Shown here one piece after another: positions 4,612 to 62,638 of a stretch of DNA of 64,000 nt. Both the position numbers and the translations under genes were made by a program. How positions within the stretch are numbered: the first letter of the stretch is position 1; every line of letters starts with the position of its first letter. Below the pieces are notes generated by a model. It was not told where the DNA came from, searched no databases, and saw only the letters and a list, made by a program, of their open reading frames with translations. The stretch is taken from IMG/VR virus record IMGVR_UViG_3300032334_002567, positions 124,001 through 188,000 of that record; one strand, written 5' to 3'.

Positions 4612-4691
4612 GGGGAGTCTCCTTTTTCTGTATATATTGTGTACTAATTAATTTTTTTAGTTAAAAACGTTTTATTTTGATATATAAAATC

Positions 4692-5186
4692 ATGATATCT
4701 TTTAAAAGCTGGCTATTTGAAAACGATGCAGAGCACACAGAGACTTTAAAAAAAACGGGTTTCTGGGGCAAACAAGGAGCTGGCTGCATTATATTATCAA
4801 AAAGTACAGGTAGAATATTGTTGCCACATAGATCAAACAAAACCCTTGAGCCTAATACTTGGGGAGTTTGGGGTGGTGCTATAGACGGTGCAGAAAACCC
4901 ACAGATAGCAGCAAAAAGAGAGGTTGAAGAAGAGGCAGGATACTCTGGTCATGCCGCTATGGTGCCATTGTCTATTTTTCAGAAAAACGATTTTAAGTAT
5001 CACAACTTCTTAGCGATTGTGGATGAAGAATTCGTTCCACAACTTAACTGGGAAACACAAAACTATGTCTGGACAACTTTAGATGAACTTCCAAGTCCTC
5101 TCCATTTCGGTTTACAGTGGGTTTTATCTAGAGACAAAGGTAAAATTCAGAGTATTATAGATTCATTCAATTTAGTGCCCGCTTAA
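4692..5186 (+). CDS. Nudix hydrolase with CTS-like N-terminus
   Basis: Nudix box GGAIDGAENPQIAAKREVEEEAG; likely start MISFKSWLFE at 4692. Confidence 0.88.
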   Translation: MISFKSWLFENDAEHTETLKKTGFWGKQGAGCIILSKSTGRILLPHRSNKTLEPNTWGVWGGAIDGAENPQIAAKREVEEEAGYSGHAAMVPLSIFQKNDFKYHNFLAIVDEEFVPQLNWETQNYVWTTLDELPSPLHFGLQWVLSRDKGKIQSIIDSFNLVPA

Positions 5187-5215
5187 TATTTTATATTTGG
5201 CACTCTATTGGAGGT

Positions 5216-5440
5216 ATGCAAAAATATAATTGTACTATACCTGTAACTGGTGGTCCTATGTGTGGAGAGTCACTAGCCGTAAAAGATGGTAGAATTCCCA
5301 ATCATTTGCCTTTATTCTTTGAAGGCAAATTTTACTCATACAATCTGGTCATAGAGTCCACAGAAGATTGGACTAACATCTATTATCAATATTCTAATGA
5401 AGTTTTAGGAATTAATGTGGATAAAAGAAATCAATTATAA
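5216..5440 (+). CDS. hypothetical protein
   Basis: 74-aa ORF, GGAGG RBS. Confidence 0.55.
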   Translation: MQKYNCTIPVTGGPMCGESLAVKDGRIPNHLPLFFEGKFYSYNLVIESTEDWTNIYYQYSNEVLGINVDKRNQL

Positions 5441-5676
5441 GTTATTACTTTCATGGAATTAGACTTTACATTTGAGTAATCTGGCCCACCGAATGGGTTA
5501 GATTTTGCATTTGAGTAATCTGGCCCACCGAATGGGTTAGATTTCGCATTTGAGTAATTTGGTCCACCGAATGGATTATTGTTTACATGGTTTTTTGTTG
5601 TAATTTTTTTGCTACACATAACGTAGCTAATTAATATAACAAAAATGATAAGCATTACTATTTTTATTTTTTTCAT
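5431..5676 (-). CDS. small membrane-anchored protein with 13-aa tandem repeats
   Basis: N-terminal hydrophobic helix; three copies of NPFGGP(N/D)YSN(A/V)KS. Confidence 0.65.
   Translation of the reverse strand: MKKIKIVMLIIFVILISYVMCSKKITTKNHVNNNPFGGPNYSNAKSNPFGGPDYSNAKSNPFGGPDYSNVKSNSMKVITYN
5469..5578. repeat. 39-bp tandem repeat x3 (coding)
   Basis: CATTTGAGTAATCTGGCCCACCGAATGGGTTAGATTT units at about 5469, 5508 and 5547. Confidence 0.9.
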
Positions 5677-5708
5677 ATTTTATTTAGTTTGTAGCTTAAA
5701 TAATTATT

Positions 5709-6512
5709 ATGTTTAAATTGTGGCTTGAAAATGAAGAAAGTACTTGCACTTTAAAGATAAGCAAGCCTAATGCTAAAATACCTCATTATAACTTTAATTT
5801 GCCAGCAGGATTTACTTGTCCTTTTGCATCAAAATGTTTATCAAAAGCTGATCCAACAACTGGCAAGTTAACAGATGGACCTAATATAGATTTTAGGTGT
5901 TCTGCCGCTGGAGAAGAAGCTCGTTATCCACCTACAAGAGCACAGAGATGGAGTAACTTTGAAGCCTTGAAAGCTATAGGTTTAGACAATGTACCCAAAA
6001 TGGCAGATGCTATTGTACAGGCAATAAACCATAACTTACCAAGAAGTCATCGTACATTCAGGCTACATGCTAGTGGTGACTTCTTTAATAAGAACTATTT
6101 AAAAGCTTGGATAGAAGTTGCTCGTAGAATGCCAGATATTACTTTTTATACCTATACAAAGAGTATACCTTATATTTTAGAAAATCTACCATTACCGAAT
6201 AATTTTCTTGTGACTGTTTCCAAAGGTGGACAACAAGATGCTTTAATTGATAGGAATGGACTCAAATTTTCTGTAGTTGTTTTTAGTGAAGAAGAAGCGG
6301 CAAACTATGTTTGGCATGATAAGAGCGGCAAACAGCATGTAGGATTAGAAATTGATCATGACGATAGCCATGCTTGGAAAGATGACAAACCTTTTGCTCT
6401 ATTAATTCATGGAACACAACCAGCCGGTTCGCCCGCTTCTAAGGCTAAATCTGCACTTGCTGGAAAGGGTTCCTACGGAAAATCTAGCAATAATAGTAGT
6501 AAAACTACATAA
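5709..6512 (+). CDS. phage Gp88-like protein with CTS-like N-terminus
   Basis: LPAGFTCP..C..C, FRLHASGDF and FYTYTKS motifs typical of the Gp88 family; starts MFKLWLENEE. Confidence 0.7.
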   Translation: MFKLWLENEESTCTLKISKPNAKIPHYNFNLPAGFTCPFASKCLSKADPTTGKLTDGPNIDFRCSAAGEEARYPPTRAQRWSNFEALKAIGLDNVPKMADAIVQAINHNLPRSHRTFRLHASGDFFNKNYLKAWIEVARRMPDITFYTYTKSIPYILENLPLPNNFLVTVSKGGQQDALIDRNGLKFSVVVFSEEEAANYVWHDKSGKQHVGLEIDHDDSHAWKDDKPFALLIHGTQPAGSPASKAKSALAGKGSYGKSSNNSSKTT

Positions 6513-6996
6513 CTACTGTTTTAGGTTTGCTATTTTGAATTGCTGCCATAATATTTTGAGATTTGGTTGTCAAAATCTGGTTTGCAACTTGCTGTGAGAA
6601 GCCAGGTGAAATTGAATTCTGATTAACAGCATTCGTTGATTGTTGAGATATGTTTTCTTTTTCTTCTTCGCTCAAGTATTGCAATGTTTGATCTGAAACA
6701 TCAAAGTATGACATTACCGTTCTGTCTACTAAAGAAGGATCTCTATTTTGCGCTTTAGAAAGCATATTTTTTTTCGCCATTTCTGCCGCTTGTTTGATTG
6801 ATGATCTGCCAAACCATGCTTTTTTTGCTTGTGACGCACCCCTCAATAGTGCTGAGCCTAAAGTAAAGGCTGTGCTCATCCCAGAGGCATCAAGAGCAAG
6901 TTGACCAGCAGCACCAGCAATGGTTTTTACTGCACCCTGAGCGTCTTTTCTATATTGTAAAATATTAGACTCTATATATTCAGCAAAACTTTTCAT
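6505..6996 (-). CDS. hypothetical protein with CTS-like N-terminus
   Basis: Likely start MKSFAEYIES at 6996 (the longer ORF would overlap tmRNA); TAAATA box 5 nt upstream. Confidence 0.6.
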   Translation of the reverse strand: MKSFAEYIESNILQYRKDAQGAVKTIAGAAGQLALDASGMSTAFTLGSALLRGASQAKKAWFGRSSIKQAAEMAKKNMLSKAQNRDPSLVDRTVMSYFDVSDQTLQYLSEEEKENISQQSTNAVNQNSISPGFSQQVANQILTTKSQNIMAAIQNSKPKTVVM

Positions 6997-7054
6997 ATTC
7001 GTATTTATCCTTGGTTGGATAAAAATTGGCTGGAAAGACACCGCAAATTTAAAC

Positions 7055-7082: not shown

Positions 7083-7094
7083 CATTTATTGTTA

Positions 7095-7446: not shown

Positions 7447-7482
7447 AAAAGGAGGACTACGAAAGTGGTCCTCCTTTTTTTT
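7447..7482 (+). terminator. rho-independent terminator after tmRNA
   Basis: AAAAGGAGGACTAC-GAAA-GTGGTCCTCCTTTT followed by a T run. Confidence 0.85.
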
Positions 7483-7566
7483 CCATTTACTTCTCAATAT
7501 ACCCCTTTATTTTCATATATAATATAGGTGCAATGAATGCACTGCTTTTTAAAAAGGAGTTTAATT

Positions 7567-8208
7567 ATGGCAGCTACAACAACAGAAGGAACCGGTGCCG
7601 GTTCAGCAGGTAAATATAATCCATTAATCATTAATGGAAAAGTTAAGGATGTAAACGTTTCTCGTAATGCTCTAGATATGTATAGAGGTTATTTGAGTGT
7701 CGATGGTCTTGATCTAATGAATCCTATTGCTACTATTACAGGTGATTTGGATGTTACGGGCGACATTGAAGCCACAGGTTATGTTCGTGGGCACTTAGCA
7801 GGTCAATTGTTAAATACTGCTTTCTGGACATTCGATAATGGTGTTATAGTATGCTCAAACACTTCTTTTACAGATGTTGCTAGCGTATCATACACACCAG
7901 TATCAGCAACATCAAAGTTGTTAATTGAATATCATGCTATGTATACTGTTAGTGGTAGTTTGGGAGACAGCTTTAGATCAAGACTAACACTTGATGGAAA
8001 TCAACTTACTTGGAGGGACCAAGCATTCTATAATGGTGCAGGCGGCGGAACTAGAAGCGGTGTTTTATTCCCAATTTCTATGGTTTATACAAACAGCAAT
8101 GTTGCTCTCAAGACTATAAGAGCACAGGCTGCAAGAGTTAGTGCTGATGATAGCGTATCTCTTGATACAACATCTGCTTACTTAAGAATATCTGAATATG
8201 CTCGCTAA
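7567..8208 (+). CDS. putative virion structural / fibre-like protein
   Basis: Start MAATTTEGTGAGS after AGGAG; G/T/S-rich, beta-rich C-terminal domain ending LRISEY; TATATA box upstream. Confidence 0.5.
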   Translation: MAATTTEGTGAGSAGKYNPLIINGKVKDVNVSRNALDMYRGYLSVDGLDLMNPIATITGDLDVTGDIEATGYVRGHLAGQLLNTAFWTFDNGVIVCSNTSFTDVASVSYTPVSATSKLLIEYHAMYTVSGSLGDSFRSRLTLDGNQLTWRDQAFYNGAGGGTRSGVLFPISMVYTNSNVALKTIRAQAARVSADDSVSLDTTSAYLRISEYAR

Positions 8209-8232
8209 AAAATCTTAGTTTTTAAGAATTTT

Positions 8233-8266
8233 AAACACCCGGCCCAAAAGGTCGGGTGTTTTTTTG
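8233..8266 (+). terminator. rho-independent terminator
   Basis: AAACACCCGGCC-CAAAA-GGTCGGGTGTTT followed by a T run. Confidence 0.8.
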
Positions 8267-9865: not shown

Positions 9866-9997
9866 CTTTTGGTGATTTTCCTGAGCGGTCAAAAATCACT
9901 CACTACTTTTAAAACACAGGTTAAAAGGAGAAAAAGAAAAAACAAAAAAGTTTTAATCTCTATATAATATAGGTTCTTTTACATGGAGGTTTAGATC

Positions 9998-10192
9998 ATG
10001 ATTCACAGATTTTTTTTAGTGCTTGCTAGAACAATAGATCACAGGGTGGGAAAAACAGATTCAGATAAGCCAGACATACCTGTTTTAACAATGCAAGAGG
10101 CATTGATATCTTTTTTCATTAAGTTTTTTATTGTTTTAGTTAATCTTATTACTTGTAGCTTTGTAATAGCAAATATCATACGTCACTGGTAA
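9998..10192 (+). CDS. small membrane protein
   Basis: GGAGG RBS, C-terminal hydrophobic helix, TATATA box upstream. Confidence 0.55.
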   Translation: MIHRFFLVLARTIDHRVGKTDSDKPDIPVLTMQEALISFFIKFFIVLVNLITCSFVIANIIRHW

Positions 10193-15201: not shown

Positions 15202-15742
15202 AACTTTACACATAAGCACACCCTATCGACCGGAGACAGGAAGCTTCGCAAAACATAAGACTTTTAATGGCGAAAAATACAAAGTACTACAATGGCATTA
15301 TTGTCGTGATATTTTTCACCCACAACTCTATAATTTAGATTTATTTTTCTTTTCTCATTATTCCAATAGGGGTCACTGTGTTGCGGCTTTTATGGAAAAG
15401 ATAGAAAAGAAGTTGGATGTAGATATACCGTCAGAGTTTGGTCCCACGCAAAAAAATTCAATAATGTGGATAAGACCTTCAAGGTGGTGGACCATTAGAT
15501 CTATGCGTAGATCTTTATTTACAATACTTTTAAGAAGTGCAAATAATTTTTCACCATCAAAAAATAACTTTAAGGAAGCTCTTTTAAGTGATCCTTACGC
15601 CATGGCCACTAGCTATGCTATAAACCGCTTTTTAAAGGGCTTTACGTTTTATACTGGTAAGAAAAAAGGATGGCTAGATCAGTTTTATGAAACAAAAATT
15701 GATAAAAAGACAATAGATTCTTTGTTGGTCGAGCCTATATAG
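15182..15742 (+). CDS. hypothetical protein (paralog of 40679-41323)
   Basis: Shares GSFA, W..CR..F, FFFSH, W..PS..W, RSL.TILLRS, AI.RF..GFT and GW...F with the paralog. Confidence 0.65.
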   Translation: MRRKFGETLHISTPYRPETGSFAKHKTFNGEKYKVLQWHYCRDIFHPQLYNLDLFFFSHYSNRGHCVAAFMEKIEKKLDVDIPSEFGPTQKNSIMWIRPSRWWTIRSMRRSLFTILLRSANNFSPSKNNFKEALLSDPYAMATSYAINRFLKGFTFYTGKKKGWLDQFYETKIDKKTIDSLLVEPI

Positions 15743-21076: not shown

Positions 21077-21159
21077 TTTTACCTCTATGGTATGTATTGA
21101 CAAACAGTAAAAATTATTGTATAAAGATATTCTTATTTGGTTGATAACTTGGAGGCTTT

Positions 21160-22912: not shown

Positions 22913-22949
22913 CTGCCTATTTTTATTCACTTTACGCATAAATACAATC

Positions 22950-30186: not shown

Positions 30187-30384
30187 ATGAACAATAATAA
30201 ATTAGTTTACTTATTTGTGGCGTTAACGGTCTTACTTTTAGTTTTTGGCATTGGGACCAAGGTTTTTGTTGATAAAGTAGCCGATAGAGTTATCTACAAG
30301 CTTCAAAAGGACTATTCTCCCTCTCCATATGGCCCCGGAATAGACCCGGACAAAATAGATTTGGATAAAGTTAAGTCTAAATAA
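30187..30384 (+). CDS. small membrane protein
   Basis: N-terminal TM, GGAGG RBS, TAAATA box. Confidence 0.55.
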   Translation: MNNNKLVYLFVALTVLLLVFGIGTKVFVDKVADRVIYKLQKDYSPSPYGPGIDPDKIDLDKVKSK

Positions 30385-30724: not shown

Positions 30725-30779
30725 GTTATTACTACTTTAACTTCGTAAGAATATTTATTATCAAGGGTCTTATATTTAA

Positions 30780-33267: not shown

Positions 33268-33324
33268 TCTTTATTTATATTTGCTACAATGAAAATTTAA
33301 AATAATTTAGCTATTATAATTTGT

Positions 33325-33660: not shown

Positions 33661-33710
33661 GTTCCTTTTCTGTGTAAATATAGATAGGCTCTCAATAAAG
33701 GACAAAATGT

Positions 33711-38346: not shown

Positions 38347-38411
38347 AGTTTAAAACGATAAATACATTAACTAAATTTTAACTATTTAACTAACTATAAG
38401 GAATTTTAACT

Positions 38412-38702
38412 ATGACTGAAGAACTTAAAAAACAACTAATTTTATCTAATCTAGAATTTGCAAATAGAGTAGCATTGAGTAAAAAGAGATTTTTATCGCA
38501 TATACATTATGAGGATCTTCAATCCGCTGCTTATTTTGGATTAGTGCAAGCAGCAAATAAATATGACTTTAAAAAAAATGACTGTTTTCAGGCGTTCGCA
38601 TTCTGTAGAATAAAGGGTGCAGTGCAAGATTACTTACGAGAAATCAATTGGGGCTCTAGAAGAAATCCTATACACATGGAAAGCTTGCAAAACTTAATTT
38701 GA
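38412..38702 (+). CDS. short sigma factor containing only region 2 (FliA/WhiG-like)
   Basis: EDLQSAAYFGLVQAANKYD...F..FA..RIKGAVQDYLRE..W; stops at 96 aa with no region 4. Confidence 0.8.
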   Translation: MTEELKKQLILSNLEFANRVALSKKRFLSHIHYEDLQSAAYFGLVQAANKYDFKKNDCFQAFAFCRIKGAVQDYLREINWGSRRNPIHMESLQNLI

Positions 38703-52021: not shown

Positions 52022-52456
52022 CTATACATTCTTTATATTCCAAATGCCGCCTTCACCTTCATCCGGCACAAAATCTTTATGCTTTGTATAAGTTGGTTTG
52101 CCGGGGATGTGTGTAATTTTCCATGGTGCTCCTTCTCCATTATTTGCTGCAAAATTGCTGTTCTTTTTTAGGTGGCTTGGTTTTCCTTTTATGTGTGTTA
52201 TATCCCATAGTCCACCATCTCCACTGTTCATCTTTTCGTTGCTTTCACCAGGAATGTGTGTAATGTCAAATTGACCACCATCTTTTCCTTTGTAGATTCG
52301 GTCGTCAATTGATAAGTAAAAGATTGCGTCTGCACTTCTTGTGGTGTACCACTGAGGTGGGTACAGACCTATACCCCCATAACTAAGAGGATATAGACCA
52401 GTTTTAGATCCAGGATTGCTTCCTTCATTTAATAACCAGTTTTTAAAGTTTAACAT
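52022..52456 (-). CDS. repeat protein with CTS-like N-terminus
   Basis: MLNFKNWLLNE; four G.G..(W/F).I(T/K)(H/N)(I/V) repeats. Confidence 0.6.
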   Translation of the reverse strand: MLNFKNWLLNEGSNPGSKTGLYPLSYGGIGLYPPQWYTTRSADAIFYLSIDDRIYKGKDGGQFDITHIPGESNEKMNSGDGGLWDITHIKGKPSHLKKNSNFAANNGEGAPWKITHIPGKPTYTKHKDFVPDEGEGGIWNIKNV

Positions 52457-52503
52457 TGTTTTGACTCACTTTAATGTATATATAATTAAAAGAAAGGAAA
52501 ATT

Positions 52504-52866
52504 ATGAATGAATGGCTTAAATTATCTGGAATAAATGAATCCATAGAATCTGATTTCGTAACATTTGCAGGCAAGAGATATCAAGGAGCAGAAAAGATAG
52601 TAAATATGGCTGACAAAAAAGGTGGCCCAGCCCTTTTAACTAGAGATCATTTTTCTGTAAAATTGCCATATTATGAAAAGGCAAAAGAAGGTAAATTTGA
52701 TAGAGTAGAAATGAAAAAGGAATATCAAGAATTATGTACACGTCTACACTCAAAAATGAACTCGATAGAAAAAGTAAATCAGATAGAGTTTCAAAAGTTA
52801 TTGGGGAGAATAGAGGTAGTAGGGGAGCTTCTGATAAAGACGCAGGATCTCCAAGGAGCAGGATGA
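52504..52866 (+). CDS. hypothetical protein with variant tag
   Basis: MNEWLKLSGINE; shares the TATATATA box with the divergent gene. Confidence 0.55.
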   Translation: MNEWLKLSGINESIESDFVTFAGKRYQGAEKIVNMADKKGGPALLTRDHFSVKLPYYEKAKEGKFDRVEMKKEYQELCTRLHSKMNSIEKVNQIEFQKLLGRIEVVGELLIKTQDLQGAG

Positions 52867-53462: not shown

Positions 53463-53502
53463 TTAGTATCGTTAATATATAATTAAAGTTTGGGAGGAAT
53501 AT

Positions 53503-54168
53503 ATGAATTTTAGTGAATGGTTAATGAACGAAGAAAAAGATGCTTGTTATTATAAAGTAAAAGCTACAGCATCTGTGTGGCCCTCTGCCTATGCTAGCGG
53601 ACGGGTTGTCCAATGTAGGAAAAAAGGTGCCAAAAATTATGGTAACTCCAAAAAGAAAAAACATAAAAAGAAAAAACACATGCAAGAAGAGGGTGTGCAA
53701 ATAGACGAAGTTCTAGCAAATAAGCAGCAATACGACGATGCAGCAAGTGCCCTTAATGCTTTAATGTATCAAGACATGGACGTAGCCAATATGTCAGGCC
53801 CAGAGATCATCAATGCTTTAGCTGCCATGAGAAAATATCCACCAGAAGGCGTGAAACCCAGCACATTTGCTGGAAGGATAAAGGCTGTCGCAAGTGGCAG
53901 TGTGGACAAAAAAGATTTTCGGGAAGGAACATTTGATCTTGAAAAAGAAAAAGGCCTTCATGGTTGGTTTTCTAGAAATAAAGGCAAAGGATGGATCGAT
54001 TGCAAGGCTAGCACTAAGACTAAAAAGGTTCCATGTGGTAGAAGTAAAGCAGGAAAAGGAGCAGAAAGAAAGTATCCTGCTTGTAGGCCAACTTTTTCGG
54101 CCTGCAATGCCACTGGTAAAAGGAGGAAAAAAAGTTCAAAACCTGTATCTTGGAAGAAAGAAGAATAA
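53503..54168 (+). CDS. basic Cys-containing protein with CTS-like N-terminus
   Basis: MNFSEWLMNEE; DACYYKVK..VWPSAYASG..V.CRK and GL..WF..W.D..PCGR..KYP.CRP modules, which I recall from T4-like phage proteins. Confidence 0.6.
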   Translation: MNFSEWLMNEEKDACYYKVKATASVWPSAYASGRVVQCRKKGAKNYGNSKKKKHKKKKHMQEEGVQIDEVLANKQQYDDAASALNALMYQDMDVANMSGPEIINALAAMRKYPPEGVKPSTFAGRIKAVASGSVDKKDFREGTFDLEKEKGLHGWFSRNKGKGWIDCKASTKTKKVPCGRSKAGKGAERKYPACRPTFSACNATGKRRKKSSKPVSWKKEE

Positions 54169-54420
54169 ATGCCTCTAACTCCTCCAATTTATACTTTTGT
54201 AGTTAATAACATTGATTACACAGAAATATATTCTAGGCCTATGACGGAGAACATAGAAAATGTAATCTTAAATTTAAACAATCAGGCTGTTTATGTTCCT
54301 TATATAAATAAGCCTTTAAAAAATGGCGATATTTTCACATTAAACGGAAAAAAAGCGGAACATGTGTACAATATATACATTGGAAAAAGCCCAAAGATTC
54401 TAGAGCTTTTGGAAGGATAA
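54169..54420 (+). CDS. hypothetical protein
   Basis: 83-aa ORF. Confidence 0.5.
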   Translation: MPLTPPIYTFVVNNIDYTEIYSRPMTENIENVILNLNNQAVYVPYINKPLKNGDIFTLNGKKAEHVYNIYIGKSPKILELLEG

Positions 54421-54422: not shown

Positions 54423-54662
54423 ATGAAGTTTTCATTATGGTTGGAAAGAAGAGAAAAAAGAAATCAAAAATCAGCAACTAAACAACCAAGAATTAAGAGT
54501 AACCAAGAGCTTGCCTTAAGAACAAGTAAATCACGTATACACGACATGGCCGGTCAAGGTGATTCAAAAACATATGGACGTTCTGGAAGCTCAGATTCAA
54601 ATATTTATAAAGGTTCAAGATCTAAAAAGAATAGGGACGCAATCAGATCTTTTGATCACTGA
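54423..54662 (+). CDS. small basic protein with CTS-like N-terminus
   Basis: MKFSLWLERRE; K/R/S-rich. Confidence 0.55.
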   Translation: MKFSLWLERREKRNQKSATKQPRIKSNQELALRTSKSRIHDMAGQGDSKTYGRSGSSDSNIYKGSRSKKNRDAIRSFDH

Positions 54663-54665: not shown

Positions 54666-55397
54666 TTAGCCCAAATTTGCCTTAGCATCTATCACAGCTT
54701 TATATATTCTTTGATACATTTTACGCTTTTGTTGCGATGATCCGTGTGCGAAGTATATGTGATAATACTTCCAGTACTCGGGATCACCAATAACTCCGTA
54801 AATTTTTTCGGCTTTAGATTTCTCAGGATTAGATATAAATCTTAATGTGTCATCTAACTGTTTTTTTAATATCGGTTCTTTATCAGTACCTTTTAGTCTA
54901 TCCGCAGCAGTTGTTATTGAGTAGGCTAGCTGTCCTGTATATGCATCGAATTCGAATGGATGAGTGTAGTAATCGATTCCACCTTTGTTATCGTAGTTTT
55001 TGACGTTTTTAAAAGTATTAAAGTTACTCATTTTTGGGTCCATAGAGTGTATTAATTCATGGGCTACTACTCTTTCAATCCACCTAGGAGTTAGTTCTTC
55101 TTCTTCAACATGAGCAACATTGATTTGTATGCCGTATCCTATTCTAAATGACCCATTATTGTTTTCATAGCTATTGTTTACAACGTGTATGTTTATTTCA
55201 CGTTGCCTATCTTTAAAGTATGGATCGTTATACTTTATTATTGCTACATCAAAAACCTCTCCCTCGGGCTCTTTTTTAATAGCTTTTGCTGTTTGATAAA
55301 TTTTGTCGATAGACGATTTAATTTGGGACACGATTTCATCGGTTAACCGTATACCTTTACTCTCAGATATTTGAAACCATTCTTTAAATTTAATCAT
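54666..55397 (-). CDS. HEXXH zincin-like protein with CTS-like N-terminus
   Basis: Start MIKFKEWFQISE; VAHELIH ... YY..P.E..A. Confidence 0.65.
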   Translation of the reverse strand: MIKFKEWFQISESKGIRLTDEIVSQIKSSIDKIYQTAKAIKKEPEGEVFDVAIIKYNDPYFKDRQREINIHVVNNSYENNNGSFRIGYGIQINVAHVEEEELTPRWIERVVAHELIHSMDPKMSNFNTFKNVKNYDNKGGIDYYTHPFEFDAYTGQLAYSITTAADRLKGTDKEPILKKQLDDTLRFISNPEKSKAEKIYGVIGDPEYWKYYHIYFAHGSSQQKRKMYQRIYKAVIDAKANLG

Positions 55398-55511
55398 ATT
55401 GCTTCCATTTAAACTATTTCTAAATATATATGTAATTTCTTTTCGGTATTGACTAAATCGAACCCCAGAACTAAATTGCTTTTTTTGGTGACCCCTCAAT
55501 AAGAAGATTTT

Positions 55512-56690
55512 ATGTGGTCAACGGTTTTTACTCTTCTTGCATCTTTTGTAGGGATTTGGGCTGTTTTTAAGTATGTTCTATTGATAGAAACCCGAATAGA
55601 CACTAATACTTTTAAAACTCTGTACGAGCTTTGTAAAGAAGAGAAAAAGATAATTATTCACGAAGAATTTGTAACTGAAAACCGTCATCCCGTTATTTTT
55701 TCTGCTTTTTGTTTTTTTAATGGTTCTCCTTGGTTTTACATAGATCGAACAGAAAGATTGATGCAAGCAGGATATCACGGCAAAGACCATTTGACTTTTA
55801 TTTTTTGTTTTCGTTGGCAATATTCTAAATTAAAAAAGTATCTACATGGCAGAATAAAAGAAATGCAGTTTTATACTTTGGGAGTTCCTGTAGAACTTAT
55901 GCTACCCTACGGTGCTGATAAAATCGGTTCTTTAAAGAAGACTTTTCCAGCTCCTATTGTTGATGATTCTCTTTGGGTTGATTTTGATAGAGAGGTTGAA
56001 GAGGTATCTCAACTTAAAAGATCAACCACTAGTGCCCTTTTTTATGGGCCACCTGGAAACGGGAAAACTTCATTTATAAAGTATCTTTCTACAAAGCACA
56101 AATTGCCCATAATGATCTTTACGCTAGATCCTGATTGGAACAATCAGGATTTGCTTCTTATGTTTTCGCAGATTCCAAAAAAGTGCATAGTTTTATTTGA
56201 AGACTTTGATAATTATTTTCATGGAAGAAAATGTATAATGGGTGGTGAAGGAAACCGTACAATCAAATTTACTTATGACATAATCTTGAACGGATTAGAT
56301 GGAGTTTATACCACTTATGAAAACGTAGTTTTTATAATGACTGTAAACGACATTTCAAAAGTAGATTCAGCCTTGAGAAACAGACCTTCCAGATTTAAGT
56401 ACACAAGGTGCTTTTCAAACCCAAATTTATCTATAAGAAAAAAGATTTTAGTTCAAGACTGGGCGGAAAAATCTGATGGCTTGAATCTAGATCAAATCTT
56501 TAGACTCAAAGAGTATTTTGAACAAGGTAATGACTTCGAAGAGGCAATAGCTAGATTAGAGAAAAACTTCAGTCACTCGGATATAGAATTTGCTGCATTT
56601 GAAAGGTTTAAAGAAAGACAAGAACTAAGTATACAAGGAGGTGCACAGGATGATTGGAATCACGCAATAAATCATCTTAGATCAAAGTAA
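55512..56690 (+). CDS. membrane-anchored AAA+ ATPase (BCS1-like) with DUF2934-like tail
   Basis: N-terminal TM; GPPGNGKT, FEDFD, LNGLDG, DSALRNRPSR; C-terminal DIEFAAF...R...G.A.DDW..A. Confidence 0.8.
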   Translation: MWSTVFTLLASFVGIWAVFKYVLLIETRIDTNTFKTLYELCKEEKKIIIHEEFVTENRHPVIFSAFCFFNGSPWFYIDRTERLMQAGYHGKDHLTFIFCFRWQYSKLKKYLHGRIKEMQFYTLGVPVELMLPYGADKIGSLKKTFPAPIVDDSLWVDFDREVEEVSQLKRSTTSALFYGPPGNGKTSFIKYLSTKHKLPIMIFTLDPDWNNQDLLLMFSQIPKKCIVLFEDFDNYFHGRKCIMGGEGNRTIKFTYDIILNGLDGVYTTYENVVFIMTVNDISKVDSALRNRPSRFKYTRCFSNPNLSIRKKILVQDWAEKSDGLNLDQIFRLKEYFEQGNDFEEAIARLEKNFSHSDIEFAAFERFKERQELSIQGGAQDDWNHAINHLRSK

Positions 56691-57594
56691 AGTCTATAAA
56701 CTGTATTTCTAATATTTCTCTTGGAAACAACTCACCAGAAGCTAATTTTGGTTCGTCGCTATTTCTCCAATTGGATTTTATTCTTCGAAGTACTTCTGGG
56801 GTGTGGGTGAAGAACAACTCTACTGGTTGAGTTACCACACTTTCTTTGAGTATTGTAAACCCTGCATCTTTGATGAATCTTTTATATGTTTTGATTGGGT
56901 TTATTATTCTTAAAATTTCTGGAGGTTCTAGCCCCATTGCATACAGCTCATCTTTTGTAAAAACTAAATGTAGATAGGCTTTATTTAATTGTTTATAAAG
57001 ATGTGATCCATGGCGACTTGTCCAAGGGTGTATTCTTAGAAAAACTTGCCCATCGATAGGCTTTTTGACTTCTTGGATCATTTGTAGTGTAGAAGCTGGA
57101 TCTTTGCAGTGATCAAGCACATCGTTTATTAAAATAATATCATATGGTCCTTTTCTTCTAACATCTTCCCATTCTGTCGTGAATTTTAATTCATCGTGTG
57201 GGTCAAGAGCTGCCCAGTCTTGGTTTTTTATATCATATCCAACAACATTTTTAGATTCATATAGAGTGGCAGCAACGTATGGAACGTGGCCTTCTCCACA
57301 TCCAAAGTCCAAGAATGATTTTTCTTTTAGATCCATTGCTATGAAGTCTTGAACAATGCCAGCGGCTCTTGACATTTTTTCTTCTTCTATATCGTTGCAT
57401 ATTAGTTCTGGCGGCACCGCCTCAGGCCAAACATCTGATTTAGCCAACATCCTTAGTTCTGTTATTTCTGATAGCCTGTCCCTTTCACCTTTTTGAAAAG
57501 GTACAATTTTATTCTCTTCTTCTAGAAGAGTTTTCAGAAAACTACTAATGTGATCTAATGCTCTTATGTACTCTTTAATGCTTTTTTGATTCAT
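56677..57594 (-). CDS. class I SAM-dependent methyltransferase
   Basis: FLDFGCGEG, VGYDI, YDII...VLDH. Confidence 0.85.
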   Translation of the reverse strand: MNQKSIKEYIRALDHISSFLKTLLEEENKIVPFQKGERDRLSEITELRMLAKSDVWPEAVPPELICNDIEEEKMSRAAGIVQDFIAMDLKEKSFLDFGCGEGHVPYVAATLYESKNVVGYDIKNQDWAALDPHDELKFTTEWEDVRRKGPYDIILINDVLDHCKDPASTLQMIQEVKKPIDGQVFLRIHPWTSRHGSHLYKQLNKAYLHLVFTKDELYAMGLEPPEILRIINPIKTYKRFIKDAGFTILKESVVTQPVELFFTHTPEVLRRIKSNWRNSDEPKLASGELFPREILEIQFIDFTLI

Positions 57595-57658
57595 TTTTCT
57601 TTCCCATATAACTCTAATATATAACAGTCATTTTCTTTTAAATTTAGTAGGAGCCTTG

Positions 57659-58459
57659 ATGGCGGAAGAAAACAAAATAATGATCAATAGGACAATAAGG
57701 ACCGAGTTATTCGCCAAAAAAGAGGTCGAAATAATAATTCCTTTTTATGGAAAGCACTCGTTTGTAAGCAATTTAGTTCAGGACATTTTTAATACCGTTT
57801 ATTCTAATAGGTACCTTGTTACTTTGGTTGATGACGGTTCTTCCAACAACGAATTTCACACACAAATACAAAAATCTAAGGTTCCTGGCTTACGGTGCTT
57901 AAGACAAAGACAAAATAAAGGTTTTGGATCCTCAATAAACTTTGCTTTGTCAAATCCTTGGATATTTGAAAATAATTCAACAAAAGAAATACCATATGTT
58001 TTATTAATGCACTCTGACGTTTCGCTGGATAGCAAAGATTGGCTTTTAAATTTAGGCAATTTTTTGGAGTCGTTCAAAAAAGATAATGTGAAAATGGTTT
58101 CCCCAAAAACAGATAATCCAGTAGTAGATTTCGATGTCTTAAAAAGCAAAAGGTCTTTTAGTGGAGAAAATTACATTTTAAAAAATGAGTTTTTGCCTCT
58201 TTACTGTGCACTTGCTCACAGAGATCTATTTAAACATGTTGGTTTATTTAAAGAATACCCTTATGCTGGTTGCGAAGCAGAAGAGTTTGCCAAGAGAATG
58301 AATTCTAAAGGTTTTAAGCAAGGAGTTTGTGGTTCTAGCTGGGTTTCTCACATCGGCAGAGGCACACTACAACAATTTGATAAGAATAGAAAAGTCAAGG
58401 AAATATTGCGAAAAGCTAGAGAACAACATGACAAAGATATGCAGAAAACTAATATATAA
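57659..58459 (+). CDS. glycosyltransferase family 2
   Basis: IIIPFY, LVDDGS, NKGF...N, HSD, VGLF, V.H.G. Confidence 0.85.
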   Translation: MAEENKIMINRTIRTELFAKKEVEIIIPFYGKHSFVSNLVQDIFNTVYSNRYLVTLVDDGSSNNEFHTQIQKSKVPGLRCLRQRQNKGFGSSINFALSNPWIFENNSTKEIPYVLLMHSDVSLDSKDWLLNLGNFLESFKKDNVKMVSPKTDNPVVDFDVLKSKRSFSGENYILKNEFLPLYCALAHRDLFKHVGLFKEYPYAGCEAEEFAKRMNSKGFKQGVCGSSWVSHIGRGTLQQFDKNRKVKEILRKAREQHDKDMQKTNI

Positions 58460-58504
58460 TTATGTTGGAGTATAGCTTCAAACATTTATTAAGGAGGATA
58501 TCTC

Positions 58505-58660
58505 ATGAGATGCTTAAAACCAAATGGAACCTACACAACTGCTTCTTGGAAATACTTTTATCCACGTTGCAGCAGAATTGCTCAGGCTCTTGGAATTTGC
58601 AACGGCAAGGCCGGAGCTTGGGTCGCAGCTGTAACAGTCTGTGGCCAAAGATTATTCTAA
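58505..58660 (+). CDS. 51-aa Cys-containing protein (not in the ORF track)
   Basis: AAGGAGG RBS; MRCLKPNGTYTTASWKYFYPRCSRIAQALGICNGKAGAWVAAVTVCGQRLF; TATATA box upstream and terminator downstream. Confidence 0.65.
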   Translation: MRCLKPNGTYTTASWKYFYPRCSRIAQALGICNGKAGAWVAAVTVCGQRLF

Positions 58661-58684
58661 GTTGAAATAAAACTATTCGTAAAT

Positions 58685-58717
58685 AAAACCACTGGGGGAA
58701 ACCTCAGTGGTTTTTTT
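58685..58717 (+). terminator. rho-independent terminator
   Basis: AAAACCACTGGGG-GAAA-CCTCAGTGGTTTT followed by a T run. Confidence 0.85.
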
Positions 58718-59773: not shown

Positions 59774-60409
59774 ATGAAGATTATTTTCCCGCCCAGACCC
59801 AAAGGCAAAATGCTTCCTACGGATCTTCGTTACTATGAAGAAACTGGAGATTGGGTAGCACAAAGAAAGTTTAGGGGCAGCAGAATAGTTCTGCATATTT
59901 CTTGCAATAAAGAAGTTACTGTTGGGACTAGACACGGCACTGCTTTTTCAAAATTCCAGTTTGAAAGCAAAAGGCGGGATGAGCTATTAGATAGCTTGAA
60001 TCTTGAGCAAAACAAAGAATATTGGCTTGATGGTGAATTAATGAACAAAGACATTAATGCCACCAATGAAATAATTTTCTTTGATGTGTTGCAAGCTGGC
60101 AGATACTTGTTTTTTAAGCCAACGCAAGTTGAGCGACTTGAAATTTTGAATTCAATTTGTGGAAGCCCCACAAAAAAGAGTAGGTCAGGAATCGCATTAG
60201 AGATATCGCCATCTCACTGGATGGCTGAAACTTTCTATGACAACTTTTCTTCTAGATTTGATGAATCTTTAGACAACCCACAGCTAGAAGGATTATTGTT
60301 AAGAAAAAAGAATGTCGGTATTGAGAGTTTGGGTGAAAAGGAGTATGAAACAACCAACTTGATACGCTGCCGCAAACCCTTTTCAAAAACCAAGGGATAC
60401 GAATTTTGA
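59774..60409 (+). CDS. stand-alone ATP-dependent ligase-type nucleotidyltransferase domain
   Basis: QRKFRGSR, LDGEL, FFD, EGLLLRKK, RCRK; no OB domain. Confidence 0.7.
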   Translation: MKIIFPPRPKGKMLPTDLRYYEETGDWVAQRKFRGSRIVLHISCNKEVTVGTRHGTAFSKFQFESKRRDELLDSLNLEQNKEYWLDGELMNKDINATNEIIFFDVLQAGRYLFFKPTQVERLEILNSICGSPTKKSRSGIALEISPSHWMAETFYDNFSSRFDESLDNPQLEGLLLRKKNVGIESLGEKEYETTNLIRCRKPFSKTKGYEF

Positions 60410-60451
60410 TTTTTTGATTTCTTCAACCTTTACAGAAAAAAGGACTTTTCG

Positions 60452-61984
60452 ATGAAAAAGGCAAATTCTTTCGGTTTAATTGACGGTATTGAACATCTCC
60501 ACGGTTCCCTCTTCAAAGTTAAATTTTCAAAAATTATAACCACCGACAAAGTGGAAGAATCTTCGGATTATGTATTTTCTAACCCAAGACTTTTAACGCA
60601 GAACGGCACCGAAACCCTTACAGATAGGTCTTTGTCTGCGGACCTAAGGGAAAACATTAAGCACAGAACGCTTTTGAATCCCTTGATTTGCCGTTGGGTT
60701 GGCGATAGTGAAAATGCACACCCCCAGCTTGTTGGTGGTGATCGTAGGTATAGAGCCTTGGACTATCTCATCTCTAAAAAAGAGATGGTAATTGATCCAA
60801 GAGAAAGCAAATTTGGAGAAACTACTTCTGAAAGAGAAATGGTTTCTGCTGACATTGCATACGAATACGTTGTCTGCCAGATATTTAGCTGTGCAAGCGA
60901 TCTTGAAGCTGCAACGCTCGCATGGGCAGAAAATAAGAATCGCATCAACCTGACGGACGGTCATGAAGTGGCTGCTGTGCGGGAATTCCGTTTGTATGGA
61001 GCCAGTGACGATCAGATTCTTGAAATCCTGCAAAGAGATTCAAAATGGCTTCATGAAACAGATGAACTTCTTGAAAAAATTGACGAAGATACGTTGTCTC
61101 AGCTTTGTGAAGACAAAATCAAGAGAAGCGTAGCCTCCCAACTTTTAAAGATTGACGATCTTGAAAAGAGATCGGAAGTTTTAAGTGCTGCTATTGTCAA
61201 TGCACAGGAAAGCCATAAGGCTAAAACCTCAAAGTTGGACAAACAGCTAGACGCAATTAAAAATAAAAGAGGTAGGGCTGAGACAAAAAAAGTTATTGCA
61301 GAAAGTAATAACGATGAAACCTTGCTTCGACAGTCAAAGAAGGTCATTGACAGGACTGAAGAACGAGAAAAAGAGATTCAGAATAAGAAATCGAAGACAA
61401 AGCCAATCGCTTCTTCCAAAAATTTGAAGCAAGCTATGGCCGAAGTTGGTGTTGAAGAAAATTCAAACGCCAGAGCCGGTATCAAGAGTATTAAGAAAGT
61501 TTTGGCCACTATCCAGTCAATTATCGATAAGGATGGTGTTGTTGATATTCTTGGTGAAGACGTCTCTTTTCAGCTTGATCCAGTTTACTTGGAATTATTG
61601 AAGCTTGTTTTAGAAAACCATGCGCTCAAAGATTCTGATAGTCTAAAGGATACTCTGGATCAGTGGCGGGAAGAATTTCCAGAAGCTGTTGATGCCCATA
61701 GTGCTGTTGTAGAGCAAGAAATTGTAATTGTAGATGAGGATGAGGATGAGGATGAGGATGAGGATGAGGATGAGGATGAGGATGAGGATGAGGATGAGGA
61801 TGAGGATGAGGATGAGGATGAGGATGAGGATGTAGAAGACGAAGACGAAGACGAAGACGAAGACGAAGACGAAGACGAAGACGAAGACGAAGAACTGATC
61901 AGCAGCGAATCAGACGATGAATTTTATGATGATTCTTCTGAAGAGCTTGAAAGCCTTGTACAAGATGAAGAAGACGAGGACTAA
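60452..61984 (+). CDS. ParB/Srx N-terminal-domain protein with coiled coil and long Asp/Glu tail
   Basis: NPR, LLNPL, LVGGDRRYRA, AEN..R..L. Confidence 0.7.
   Translation: MKKANSFGLIDGIEHLHGSLFKVKFSKIITTDKVEESSDYVFSNPRLLTQNGTETLTDRSLSADLRENIKHRTLLNPLICRWVGDSENAHPQLVGGDRRYRALDYLISKKEMVIDPRESKFGETTSEREMVSADIAYEYVVCQIFSCASDLEAATLAWAENKNRINLTDGHEVAAVREFRLYGASDDQILEILQRDSKWLHETDELLEKIDEDTLSQLCEDKIKRSVASQLLKIDDLEKRSEVLSAAIVNAQESHKAKTSKLDKQLDAIKNKRGRAETKKVIAESNNDETLLRQSKKVIDRTEEREKEIQNKKSKTKPIASSKNLKQAMAEVGVEENSNARAGIKSIKKVLATIQSIIDKDGVVDILGEDVSFQLDPVYLELLKLVLENHALKDSDSLKDTLDQWREEFPEAVDAHSAVVEQEIVIVDEDEDEDEDEDEDEDEDEDEDEDEDEDEDEDEDVEDEDEDEDEDEDEDEDEDEELISSESDDEFYDDSSEELESLVQDEEDED
61733..61891 (+). 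repeat. perfect hexamer repeats (GATGAG)16.5 then (GACGAA)9 encoding poly-DE
   Basis: Directly visible in the sequence. Confidence 0.95.
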
Positions 61985-61986
61985 AG

Positions 61987-62580
61987 GTGTTTGAGCCCAA
62001 AATTATTGATGACGTTTTGTCTTCTGAGGAATTAGAATTAATTTCTCTGTTTCTATCCAACTTAGGCCACTGGTCCCAGTCGAATGGGGGTGGCCTAAGT
62101 TGGCAGGGAAGGATCATTCATGACTACAACGTATTCGAAGTAAACAATCAGTTGGGTCTTTTGTTGGCAAGTTTTAGAAATAGATTCCAGAAAGCTATTT
62201 CTGAAGCATACCAACTCAAGGACTTGATTTATCCTGATACATTTGAAATTGTTCGTTGGGATGTTGGGTCTGAACAATCGCCTCATTGGGATGATATGGT
62301 CGGGACTACCGCATCGGAGGAACACCTTCAATGGTGCAAGCACAGGGCTTATGGCTCTGTGCTTTATTTAAACGACGATTATACAGGTGGAGAAACTTAT
62401 TATTCAAATTATGATTTCCAAATAACACCAAAAGCTGGTCGTTTGGCTGTGCATCCGGGTGATAAGAACCATGCACACGGAGTTCGTAAGGTATTAGGAA
62501 AAACTAGATATACTATTGCATCTTTTTGGACTTTCGATAAAAATTTTGAAGATATATGGATTCCAAATATAAATTCTTGA
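61987..62580 (+). CDS. 2OG-Fe(II) oxygenase
   Basis: PHWD, YLNDDYTGGE, HGV..V..RYT..FW. Confidence 0.88.
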   Translation: MFEPKIIDDVLSSEELELISLFLSNLGHWSQSNGGGLSWQGRIIHDYNVFEVNNQLGLLLASFRNRFQKAISEAYQLKDLIYPDTFEIVRWDVGSEQSPHWDDMVGTTASEEHLQWCKHRAYGSVLYLNDDYTGGETYYSNYDFQITPKAGRLAVHPGDKNHAHGVRKVLGKTRYTIASFWTFDKNFEDIWIPNINS

Positions 62581-62638
62581 CTATTTGCTGCCATTTATTT
62601 ATTTTTCATTTTATTTAATATATATCTGCGGAGGGATC

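What the first reader, a model, noticed from the sequence alone, without database searches (positions are those of the whole stretch)
4631..62624. TA(A/T)ATA late-promoter-like box marks tagged and structural genes
Seen: a TAAATA/TATATA box lies within about 4-50 nt upstream of nearly every tagged gene (4631, 4681, 5697, 7002, 30752, exact TATAAATA at 33272-33279, 33675, palindromic TATATATA at 52477 serving two divergent genes, 53476, about 55425, 62619). It also precedes structural-looking or small genes (7516, about 9961, 11793, about 15736, 22939, about 30163, 58453). I see no -35 element with these boxes. Known: T4 late promoters are a lone TATAAATA -10 element read by gp55. Inference: late single-gene units are interspersed among early/middle operons, which would explain the scattered minus-strand genes.
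Basis: partly seen in the sequence, partly recalled or inferred. Interest (0 to 1): 0.75.

Follow-up and report, generated by a model that had tools for sequence, protein, structure and literature searches.

The report
Lone ATAWATA promoter box, huge phage
A short TATATA/TAAATA box with no -35 partner marks the start of genes whose proteins carry a T4-like N-terminal tag in this 381-kb uncultured phage; it behaves like a T4-style late promoter, often sits 4-5 bases from the ATG as if the mRNA had no leader, and no T4 late sigma factor (gp55) was found in the record.

Summary
Observation confirmed. 17 of the 18 listed coordinates hold a sense-strand TA(A/T)ATA upstream of a plausible start; 11793 does not.

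The window lies in a 381-kb IMG/VR phage record with 35% GC. There, 66% of tagged genes (N-terminus M-x-F-K-E-W-L-x-x-E, like the T4 capsid-targeting sequence) carry the box within 60 nt, against 23% of untagged genes (Fisher 4e-8). Dinucleotide shuffles predict 9 tagged genes with a box; 27 are seen. In the window the counts are 12/12 against 12/84.

- No -35 element accompanies the box.
- It is orientation-specific (TATATAA 12 sense, 0 antisense).
- It is 9-24 times denser in upstream spacers than in coding DNA.
- It is conserved before orthologues in related phages while the flanks diverge.
- The association recurs in a 595-kb phage with 43% GC (7/9 against 38/588).

New point: there are two layouts. 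One is box, 14-45 nt, Shine-Dalgarno site, ATG. The other is box-N4-5-ATG with no Shine-Dalgarno site, which suggests leaderless mRNAs.

Interpretation partly supported. It works like a T4 late promoter, but the consensus is nATAWATAw and exact TATAAATA is not enriched. No gp55, gp21 or gp23 homologue was found. Late timing is only circumstantial. Candidate readers are three phage sigma-like genes, one holding region 2 only.

The parts
4631..4636 (-). TATATA box, 19 nt before the ATG of tagged gene 3697-4611 (MKFKTFQEYI), followed by AAAAAGGAG
   Evidence: The box and its spacing are conserved before the orthologues in L036, L037 and L038 while the flanks differ.
4681..4686 (+). TATATA(AA) box, 5 nt before the ATG of tagged NUDIX gene 4692-5186; no Shine-Dalgarno site
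5681..5686 (-). TAAATA box, 4 nt before the ATG of small membrane-like gene 5431-5676; no Shine-Dalgarno site (untagged)
5697..5702 (+). TAAATA box, 6 nt before the ATG of tagged GP88-domain gene 5709-6512; no Shine-Dalgarno site
7002..7007 (-). TAAATA box, 5 nt before the ATG of tagged gene 6505-6996 (MKSFAEYIES)
7516..7523 (+). TATATAAT box heading a one-gene unit: terminator 7447-7478, box, Shine-Dalgarno site, gene 7567-8208 (TNF/C1q-like fibre-tip fold), terminator 8233-8261
9961..9968 (+). TATATAAT box, 31 nt before small gene 9998-10192
15736..15741 (+). TATATA box, 24 nt before coiled-coil gene 15766-16302
   Evidence: The box is present before the orthologue in all five genomes (window, L036, L037, L038, L040), also where the flanks differ.
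22939..22944 (+). TAAATA box, 5 nt before the in-frame ATG at 22950 of ORF 22848-23657; no Shine-Dalgarno site
30752..30757 (-). TAAATA box, 27 nt before tagged gene 30377-30724; a second copy lies at 30773-30778
33272..33279 (-). Exact TATAAATA, 4 nt before the ATG of tagged gene 32824-33267 (MESFKKFLEE); no Shine-Dalgarno site
33675..33680 (+). TAAATA box, 30 nt before tagged HD-like gene 33711-34586
52477..52484 (.). Palindromic TATATATA between divergent tagged genes 52022-52456 (minus) and 52504-52866 (plus)
   Evidence: TATATA is 2.7 times denser in divergent than in co-directional spacers.
53476..53483 (+). TATATAAT box, 21 nt before tagged gene 53503-54168
54372..54377 (+). TATATA box, 45 nt before tagged gene 54423-54662; it lies inside the upstream gene
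55425..55430 (-). TATATA box, 27 nt before tagged gene 54666-55397
57618..57623 (.). TATATA box shared by divergent genes 56677-57594 (minus) and 57659-58459 (plus)
58453..58460 (+). TATATAAT box before small gene 58505-58660, which is followed by terminator 58685-58714
62619..62624 (+). TATATA box, 5 nt before GGAGG and 14 nt before the ATG of tagged gene 62639-62911 (MKTFREWQLK)
38412..38702 (+). 96-aa sigma-70 region-2-only protein; a candidate, unproven, reader of a -10-only promoter
   Evidence: Pfam Sigma70_r2 at 35 bits against a cut-off of 24. It is 46% identical to the N-terminal half of a 165-aa region 2 + region 4 sigma in LR756511. It is not gp55-like.

Best explanation
The box (consensus nATAWATAw) is the only recognition element of a phage-specific promoter class that needs no -35. 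It works like a T4 late promoter but is not part of the T4 gp55 system.

Inferred mechanism:
- Host core RNA polymerase carries a phage-specified sigma-like factor. The record encodes three: a 96-aa region-2-only protein in the window and two full-length sigmas elsewhere.
- The enzyme melts the box and starts about 5-6 nt downstream of its last A.
- Where a Shine-Dalgarno site follows, this gives a very short leader.
- Where the ATG follows 4-5 nt after the box and no Shine-Dalgarno site exists, it gives a leaderless mRNA that begins at AUG.
- The class drives mostly one-gene units scattered on both strands. These encode proteins with a T4-capsid-targeting-like N-terminal tag, plus some virion-type and small genes. 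They are probably expressed after the replication genes.

Shown: non-random occurrence, directionality, absence of a -35, two spacing classes, conservation in relatives, replication in a second genome, absence of a detectable gp55 homologue in this incomplete record.

Inferred: promoter function, position of the transcription start, the factor involved, late timing.
For: - Enrichment and tag association.
- De novo EM on the upstream DNA of tagged genes returns nATAWATAw at 6.5 bits.
- No -35. Generic sigma-70 consensus hits in the window are at shuffle level: 41 against 39, and 43 against 41.
- Directionality and location: TATATAA 12 sense against 0 antisense in co-directional spacers. TATATA density is 0.32/kb in coding DNA, 2.9/kb in co-directional spacers and 7.7/kb in divergent spacers.
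- Spacing: TATATA and TAAATA are the two commonest of all 4096 hexamers 3-8 nt before the ATG of genes without a Shine-Dalgarno site (13 + 11, against 0 + 1 in genes with one). The mode is 4 nt. Antisense TATTTA occurs twice.
- In the tagged genes read by eye, no Shine-Dalgarno site lies closer than 5 nt to a box.
- Footprints: the box is kept before orthologues of 3697-4611 (4/4 genomes) and 15766-16302 (5/5), and before 7-8 of 11 members of the 7567-8208 family on unrelated contigs, with unconserved flanks.
- Replication: in LR756511.1 (595 kb, 43% GC), 7/9 tagged genes have TAWATA-N4-8-ATG and no Shine-Dalgarno site, against 38/588 untagged genes with any box (Fisher 3e-7). The same two hexamers rank first there.
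- Class separation: of 53 canonical TTGACA-N17-TAtAAT candidate sites (44 in the 35%-GC main part), only 2 precede tagged genes. Replication-gene units lack the box.
- Unit structure: terminator, box, gene, terminator at 7447-8261 and 58453-58714.
- T4 comparison: late promoters are an 8-bp TATA box about one helical turn upstream of the start, AT-rich just downstream, with no -35 (PMC2988020). Here AT content is 71-79% in the 5 nt after the box, against about 64% overall.
- Sigma genes.
Against: - No transcript data exist. No RNA run was listed, so the promoter function, the start site and the timing are unproven.
- A 4-nt gap is shorter than the usual sigma-70 distance between the -10 element and the start. 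Leaderless starts therefore need T4-like or tighter geometry.
- Distal TAAATA alone shows no strand bias in co-directional spacers (16 against 12). Part of the distal TAAATA hits are therefore probably noise or TAA stop codons, as at 30163.
- No gp55, gp21 or gp23 homologue was found. The 96-aa sigma may be a truncated remnant, because its relative in LR756511 has region 4.
- The record is only 79% complete, so a dedicated factor or polymerase could lie in the missing part.
Confidence: 0.6

Rival explanations
1. The box is an ordinary -10 element read by the host's primary sigma without phage help, as a weak or constitutive -10-only promoter. It would not mark a separate temporal class.
For: A subset of boxes reads TATATAAT, which contains a perfect TATAAT (window 7516, 9961, 53476, 58453). 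Some AT-rich hosts tolerate poor -35 elements (general knowledge).
Against: - The consensus ends in A where sigma-70 needs T at -7. TAAATA contains no TANNNT.
- The phage also carries canonical TTGACA-N17-TAtAAT promoters, so the host sigma appears to use a -35. These are nearly exclusive of tagged genes (2 of 53 sites).
- The box-to-ATG mode of 4-5 nt is too short for sigma-70 start geometry.
- The box recurs in a 43% GC relative.
Confidence: 0.15
2. The close boxes (TAWATA 4-7 nt before the ATG) act on RNA rather than on DNA. They would be an AU-rich substitute for the Shine-Dalgarno site, or the operator of a translational regulator (in the manner of T4 RegA), on mRNAs that start further upstream.
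For: The close box occupies exactly the position a Shine-Dalgarno site would have, and it replaces one. Phage translational repressors that bind AU-rich start regions are known (general knowledge).
Against: - The same hexamer occurs 14-45 nt upstream of other tagged genes that do have a Shine-Dalgarno site, and it is conserved there.
- It is enriched in divergent spacers and is palindromic in many cases, as expected of a DNA signal.
- Other AT-only hexamers are not enriched at that position.
Confidence: 0.12
3. The box is the binding site of a dimeric DNA-binding regulator, or a recombination or insertion boundary of mobile gene cassettes carrying tagged genes. It would not be a polymerase recognition element.
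For: TATATA is palindromic. Tagged genes behave as variable cassettes: the genes between the two halves of the split DnaE differ between relatives.
Against: - The extended motif is directional: TATATAA 12 against 0.
- The spacing to the ATG or the Shine-Dalgarno site is constrained.
- No box enrichment was seen at the 3' ends, but power is low: 0 of 2 tagged and 5 of 20 untagged convergent spacers.
- The box is conserved before stable orthologues too.
Confidence: 0.08
4. Chance occurrence of TA-rich hexamers in AT-rich spacers.
For: The genome has 35% GC. Exact TATAAATA is at control level.
Against: See the shuffle tests, the tagged-versus-untagged contrast, the equal AT content of coding and non-coding DNA, the conservation in relatives and the replication at 43% GC.
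Confidence: 0.02

Closest known systems
Bacteriophage T4 late promoters (TATAAATA, read by gp55 with gp33 and the gp45 clamp)
   Same: - A lone TATA-like box at the -10 position.
- No -35 conservation.
- An AT-rich stretch just downstream.
- Very short leaders. T4 gene e has TATAAATA 3 nt before its AGGAGG.
- Association with genes for packaged or virion proteins. The tags here resemble the T4 IPI/IPII/IPIII capsid-targeting sequences MKTFKEF and MKTYQEFIAE, read from the T4 record.
   Different: - The consensus is nATAWATAw, mostly TATATA. The exact T4 octamer is not enriched.
- No gp55 was found by sequence or profile. No gp21 or gp23 was found.
- The polymerase is a split DnaE type, not T4 gp43.
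- Many units appear leaderless. The T4 ip genes have Shine-Dalgarno sites.
Leaderless genes of Actinobacteria, Deinococcus and phage lambda cI (a -10 element directly upstream of the start codon)
   Same: No Shine-Dalgarno site. A -10-like hexamer lies at a fixed short distance from an ATG. All 36 close-box genes listed start with ATG.
   Different: The spacing is 4-5 nt rather than about 6-7 nt. The hexamer lacks the terminal T of TANNNT. No 5'-end data are available here. The statements about those organisms rest on general knowledge.
Late promoters of jumbo phages with their own multisubunit RNA polymerases (phiKZ, AR9)
   Same: Short motifs without a -35 in very large phage genomes. Distinct promoter classes occur within one genome.
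   Different: No RNA polymerase beta or beta' family hit in the record. AR9 untranslated leaders are 26-491 nt (PMC5312081), unlike the minimal leaders inferred here.

Membership tests
T4-type late transcription system | 8-bp TATAAATA consensus | tested here: not met
   The exact octamer occurs 59 times in 381 kb, against 64 for the reversed control. De novo EM gives nATAWATAw. Among the window's boxes only 33272-33279 is exact.
T4-type late transcription system | No conserved -35 element | tested here: met
   The PWM around 82 TATATA sites is flat at -35. The distribution of best TTGACA matches equals that at control positions.
T4-type late transcription system | Box about one helical turn upstream of the transcription start; AT-rich segment downstream | tested here: inconclusive
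   No start sites are available. Indirect evidence: the minimum box-to-ATG or box-to-Shine-Dalgarno distance is 4-5 nt, and AT content is 71-79% in the 5 nt after the box.
T4-type late transcription system | gp55 late sigma encoded by the phage | tested here: not met
   T4 gp55 and a 22-sequence gp55 profile find nothing at E <= 10. hhalign of the 96-aa sigma against the gp55 profile gives probability 0.2%. The record is 79% complete.
T4-type late transcription system | gp33 co-activator and gp45 sliding-clamp activator | not tested
   Not searched. AAA+ clamp-loader-like genes are present.
T4-type late transcription system | Expression late in infection, coupled to replication | not testable with these tools
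   No RNA run was listed. The only evidence is circumstantial: the box is absent from replication-gene units and present before a fibre-tip-like gene.
Canonical sigma-70 promoter | TTGACA-like -35 at 16-18 nt, and T at the last position of the -10 | tested here: not met
   (last position A at 0.90).
Leaderless mRNA genes | No Shine-Dalgarno site, and a -10-like element at a fixed short distance from the ATG | tested here: met
   27 of 36 close-box genes have no Shine-Dalgarno match. The gap mode is 4 nt here and 4-5 nt in LR756511.
Leaderless mRNA genes | mRNA 5' end at the A of AUG | not testable with these tools
   No transcript data.
T4 capsid-targeting sequence (context for 'tagged') | N-terminal MKT(Y/F)(Q/K)EF-like decapeptide on otherwise unrelated proteins | tested here: met
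   T4 IPII and IPIII read MKTYQEFIAE and IPI reads MKTFKEF in the T4 record. Examples here are MKTFREWQLK, MKSFAEYIES and MESFKKFLEE on NUDIX, GP88, HD-like and CCA-adding proteins.
T4 capsid-targeting sequence (context for 'tagged') | gp21-type prohead protease that removes the tag | tested here: not met
   PF03420 has no hit in the record. The head module may lie in the missing 21%.
phiKZ/AR9-type phage RNA polymerase promoters | Phage-encoded multisubunit RNA polymerase | tested here: not met
   PF00562 and PF00623 have no hit. No polymerase pieces appear among proteins over 400 aa.

The most novel reading that the evidence does not exclude
A clade of uncultured huge phages (this 381-kb record, its IMG/VR relatives and the 595-kb LR756511.1) shares one expression module. 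Proteins with a T4-capsid-targeting-like N-terminal tag would be made from leaderless or near-leaderless mRNAs. These would start 5-6 nt downstream of a lone ATAWATA box, read by a factor unrelated to gp55. That factor might be a minimal or split sigma: the 96-aa region-2-only protein in the window, plus a 94-aa region-4-like protein at genome 28636-28920. On this reading, T4-style late promoter logic and T4-style capsid targeting exist together outside the T4 lineage.
Probability: 0.3. Interest if true: 0.7.

Novelty: new variant of a known kind. Interest (0 to 1): 0.5.

Why it matters
Huge phages known only from metagenomes have almost no mapped regulatory signals. A simple and portable rule (ATAWATA, no -35, start about 5 nt downstream) would allow several things:
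- Transcription units and a probable temporal class could be annotated from sequence alone in this clade.
- A set of about 40 diverse enzymes per genome could be flagged as candidates for packaging and injection.
- A concrete question would be raised: how is a T4-like late promoter read without gp55?

The coupling of tag, box and missing Shine-Dalgarno site in two genomes of different GC content is the part a specialist would not have predicted.

Tried and rejected
- Megablast of 12 kb of the window against the phage collection: no match.
- RNA evidence: only DNA metagenome runs hold the sequence, and no RNA run was listed.
- T4 membership: gp55 as a single sequence and as a profile, gp21 protease, gp23 capsid and sheath families were all negative.
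- Phage-encoded polymerases: no beta or beta' hit. A 12-bit T7-like hit (PF00940, E 0.011) inside the 4404-aa protein was confirmed neither by a Pfam scan of the whole protein nor by a PDB sequence search. The idea of an N4-like virion polymerase was dropped.
- The TGTACCCTA block was considered as the true late class. It was rejected because it encodes ATPases, a ligase-like protein, an endonuclease and a transposase-like protein, not virion proteins.
- Protein-atlas look-ups for 7567-8208 and 15766-16302 gave no function.
- The search for related loci with the 96-aa sigma found no relative.
- The cassette-boundary idea: 3'-end counts are too few to decide.
- Chimeric assembly was considered for the 270-325 kb high-GC block. 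It became less likely because LR756511 has an analogous TGTAC-type motif.

Full report
**Context.** The window is bases 124001-188000 of a 381,443-bp IMG/VR virus record that CheckV estimates as 79% complete. GC is about 35%, and no close relative exists in the phage collection. I called 549 genes with a hexamer and Shine-Dalgarno (SD) based caller trained on the record itself. PHROGs and Pfam annotation gave the following:
- a large terminase at 4.2 kb;
- replication and recombination genes (SbcC, ribonucleotide reductase, DnaB, UvsX, helicases, ligase);
- a DnaE-type polymerase split into two genes in the window (1569-2975 and 11990-14710);
- a tail and baseplate module at 348-378 kb.

No multisubunit or T7-like RNA polymerase was confirmed.

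**What 'tagged' means.** A regular expression for the tag finds 41 such genes in the 35%-GC main part of the record. Their bodies are unrelated: NUDIX, GP88, HD-like, CCA-adding enzyme, and many of unknown function. Read from the T4 record, internal proteins IPII and IPIII start MKTYQEFIAE and IPI starts MKTFKEF. This is the capsid-targeting sequence shared by otherwise diverse T-even internal proteins (PMC3012670). The tag therefore resembles the T4 capsid-targeting sequence. No gp21-type prohead protease was found in the record.

**The observation.** I read all listed coordinates. Seventeen of eighteen hold a sense-strand TA(A/T)ATA upstream of a plausible start.
- The box at 30752 serves the minus-strand tagged gene 30377-30724, not the plus-strand gene 30780.
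- The box at 30163 overlaps the stop codon of the gene before it.
- 11793 has no gene behind it.

In the window, 12 of 12 regex-defined tagged genes have the box within 60 nt, against 12 of 84 untagged genes.

**Is it more than chance?** Several independent tests say yes.
- *Composition.* Non-coding and coding DNA have the same AT content (63% and 63.5%). TATATA is nevertheless the second most enriched hexamer in the 60 nt before starts (83 observed, 13 expected), just behind the SD word AAGGAG.
- *Position.* TAWATA counts rise from about 5 per 10-nt bin inside genes to 20-36 per bin between -60 and -1.
- *Tag association.* In the main part of the genome, 27/41 tagged and 92/403 untagged genes have the box (Fisher 4e-8). 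Restricted to genes with an upstream spacer of at least 30 nt, the figures are 88% against 35% (1e-6). Dinucleotide shuffles of the same upstream regions give 9.2 +/- 2.3 for tagged and 53 +/- 6.5 for untagged genes.
- *Unbiased discovery.* EM on the 41 tagged upstream regions returns nATAWATAw at 6.5 bits.
- *Direction.* In co-directional spacers the extended word TATATAA occurs 12 times in sense and never in antisense.
- *Density.* TATATA density is 0.32/kb in coding DNA, 2.9/kb in co-directional spacers and 7.7/kb in divergent spacers.

**No -35.** The position matrix around 82 TATATA sites shows nothing at -35. The best TTGACA match at 16-18 nt is distributed as at control positions. The generic sigma-70 scan of two window segments is at shuffle level, 41 against 39 and 43 against 41. 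The genome does, however, hold 53 good TTGACA-N17-TAtAAT candidates, 44 of them in the main part. Examples lie before one phage sigma gene, before ligase, and between 20585-21076 and 21160-21600, where the element is conserved in relatives. Only 2 of the 53 precede tagged genes. Replication-gene units carry such sigma-70-like signals, or none, and almost never the box.

*Distal class.* The box lies 14-45 nt from the ATG with an SD site in between. In the tagged genes I read by eye, no SD site lies closer than 5 nt to a box; 62619 reads TATATAtctgcGGAGG.

*Close class.* The layout is TAWATA-N4-7-ATG with no SD site. Of 36 genes with a box within 10 nt of the ATG, 27 have no SD match.
- TATATA and TAAATA are the two commonest of all 4096 hexamers 3-8 nt before the ATG of SD-less genes (13 and 11). 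They occur 0 and 1 times in genes with an SD site.
- The gap has a sharp mode at 4 nt, and antisense TATTTA occurs twice.
- Thirteen of 16 SD-less tagged genes with a spacer have the close box, against 11 of 50 untagged genes.
- Window examples are 4681, 5681(-), 5697, 7002(-), 22939 and 33272(-).

A single model fits both classes: transcription starts about 5-6 nt after the last A of the box. That geometry is tighter than sigma-70 and close to T4's box 'about one helical turn upstream of the start' (PMC2988020). In T4, gene e has TATAAATA only 3 nt before its AGGAGG. The close class would then be leaderless.

**Conservation.** Five related IMG/VR contigs share the split DnaE (59-78% amino-acid identity) and much of the gene order.
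- Before orthologues of the tagged gene 3697-4611, the box sits 18-22 nt from the ATG in all four genomes, with unrelated flanks.
- Before orthologues of 15766-16302, TATATA is present in all five genomes.
- The 7567-8208 family has 56 homologues. It carries the box 29-45 nt upstream in 7-8 of 11 loci taken from unrelated contigs, and it is usually followed by a strong terminator.

**Independent replication.** The 96-aa sigma-like protein led to LR756511.1, a 595-kb uncultured phage with 43% GC. In its first 300 kb, 7 of 9 tagged genes have TAWATA 4-8 nt before the ATG and no SD site. Among 588 untagged genes, 38 have any box (Fisher 3e-7). TAAATA and TATATA again rank first at that position, with a gap mode of 4-5 nt.

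**What the units encode, and timing.**
- Box-headed units are 70% monocistronic, against 55% for other unit heads.
- Minus-strand genes carry the box more often than plus-strand genes: 39% against 22% (p 6e-4), and 8/13 against 16/83 in the window.
- Gene 7567-8208 is framed by terminators at 7447-7478 and 8233-8261. Its AlphaFold model has a mean pLDDT of 76. Its C-terminal domain has a TNF/C1q-like jelly-roll fold, which matches lectins and phage tail-fibre tips (Foldseek PDB 9e-6, BFVD 3e-15). At least this 'structural-looking' call is supported.
- The other small genes remain unassigned.
- 'Late' therefore rests on three indirect points: the box is absent before replication genes, it is present before a fibre-type gene, and the tags look like a capsid-targeting sequence. 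No RNA run holds the sequence.

**Who reads it?** gp55 is absent by sequence and by profile. The record encodes three sigma-70-family proteins:
- window 38412-38702, 96 aa, region 2 only;
- genome 197511-198389, 292 aa, regions 2 and 4;
- genome 330421-331320 on the minus strand, 299 aa, regions 2 and 4, itself behind a canonical promoter.

The 96-aa protein is 46% identical to the first half of a 165-aa region 2 + region 4 sigma in LR756511. It is not gp55-like. A 94-aa protein at genome 28636-28920 weakly resembles the missing region-4 half. A region-2-only sigma would suit a -10-only promoter, but the gene may simply be truncated. This step is inference.

**Verdict.** The mechanism 'lone -10-type promoter that works like a T4 late promoter' is the best-supported reading (0.6). 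Membership in the T4 gp55 system is not met. Late timing and leaderless starts are testable predictions. I rate it a new variant of a known kind, of moderate interest.

Noticed in passing
Genome 272-323 kb (outside the window; loci L020-L023): The strongest strand-specific upstream motif of the genome is (A/T)AAATAATTGTACCCTA-N5-TGT. About 75 copies lie almost all on the plus strand, 25-65 nt before starts. They are confined to a block with 41-48% GC that holds small plus-strand genes and almost no TATATA (2 copies in 270-320 kb). The block encodes AAA ATPases and ligase-like, endonuclease and transposase-like proteins. LR756511 has an analogous AGCTGTACTAA motif. This looks like a second phage-specific promoter class, perhaps early or host-takeover.
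   Followed up: partly
Window 1569-2975 and 11990-14710: The DnaE-type DNA polymerase is split into two genes about 9 kb apart. The split is conserved in related contigs. The genes in between differ from genome to genome and include four tagged genes here, so the spacer is a hot spot for cassettes.
   Followed up: partly
Window 38412-38702; genome 28636-28920 (L010:10636-10920): A 96-aa sigma-70 region-2-only ORF. Its relative in LR756511 is 165 aa and has region 4. A separate 94-aa protein with a region-4-like helix-turn-helix exists elsewhere. This is either a split or minimal sigma, or a truncated gene.
   Followed up: partly
Window 38366-38400: Three copies of TTAACTA lie directly upstream of the region-2-only sigma gene (ttaactaaattttaactatttaactaacta). 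Meaning unknown.
   Followed up: no
Window 7567-8208; genome 328395 and 328973: A family of about 200-aa proteins with an invariant N-terminal ATTTEGTG-G-S motif and a TNF/C1q-like C-terminal domain. There are three paralogues in this genome and 56 homologues in metagenomes, all unnamed. Each paralogue has its own box, and two of the three are followed directly by a strong terminator. Probably an abundant fibre or decoration protein.
   Followed up: partly
Window 21077-21159 (between 20585-21076 minus and 21160-21600 plus): A canonical TTGACA-N17-TATAAA promoter with a TTGTCAA/TTGACAA core is conserved in three relatives. It is a good example of the host-type promoter class, which is distinct from the box.
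   Followed up: partly
Genome 348024-361238 (L025:24-13238): A 4404-aa protein heads the tail and baseplate operon, preceded by TAAATA-N10-ATG without a Shine-Dalgarno site. A weak T7-like RNA polymerase hit (PF00940, 12 bits) was not confirmed.
   Followed up: yes
Genome 266-269.6 kb and 379-381 kb: Two tandem paralogue families: five small genes starting M(T/V)Y(N/D)-DGPIYS, and glycine-rich MLIGD-GDTGGIGG genes with GGTGGTAT-type DNA repeats at the end of the record.
   Followed up: no
L038:9700-9780: A tRNA-like sequence lies directly upstream of the orthologue of window gene 9998-10192 in a related contig, where the window has the TATATAAT box.
   Followed up: no
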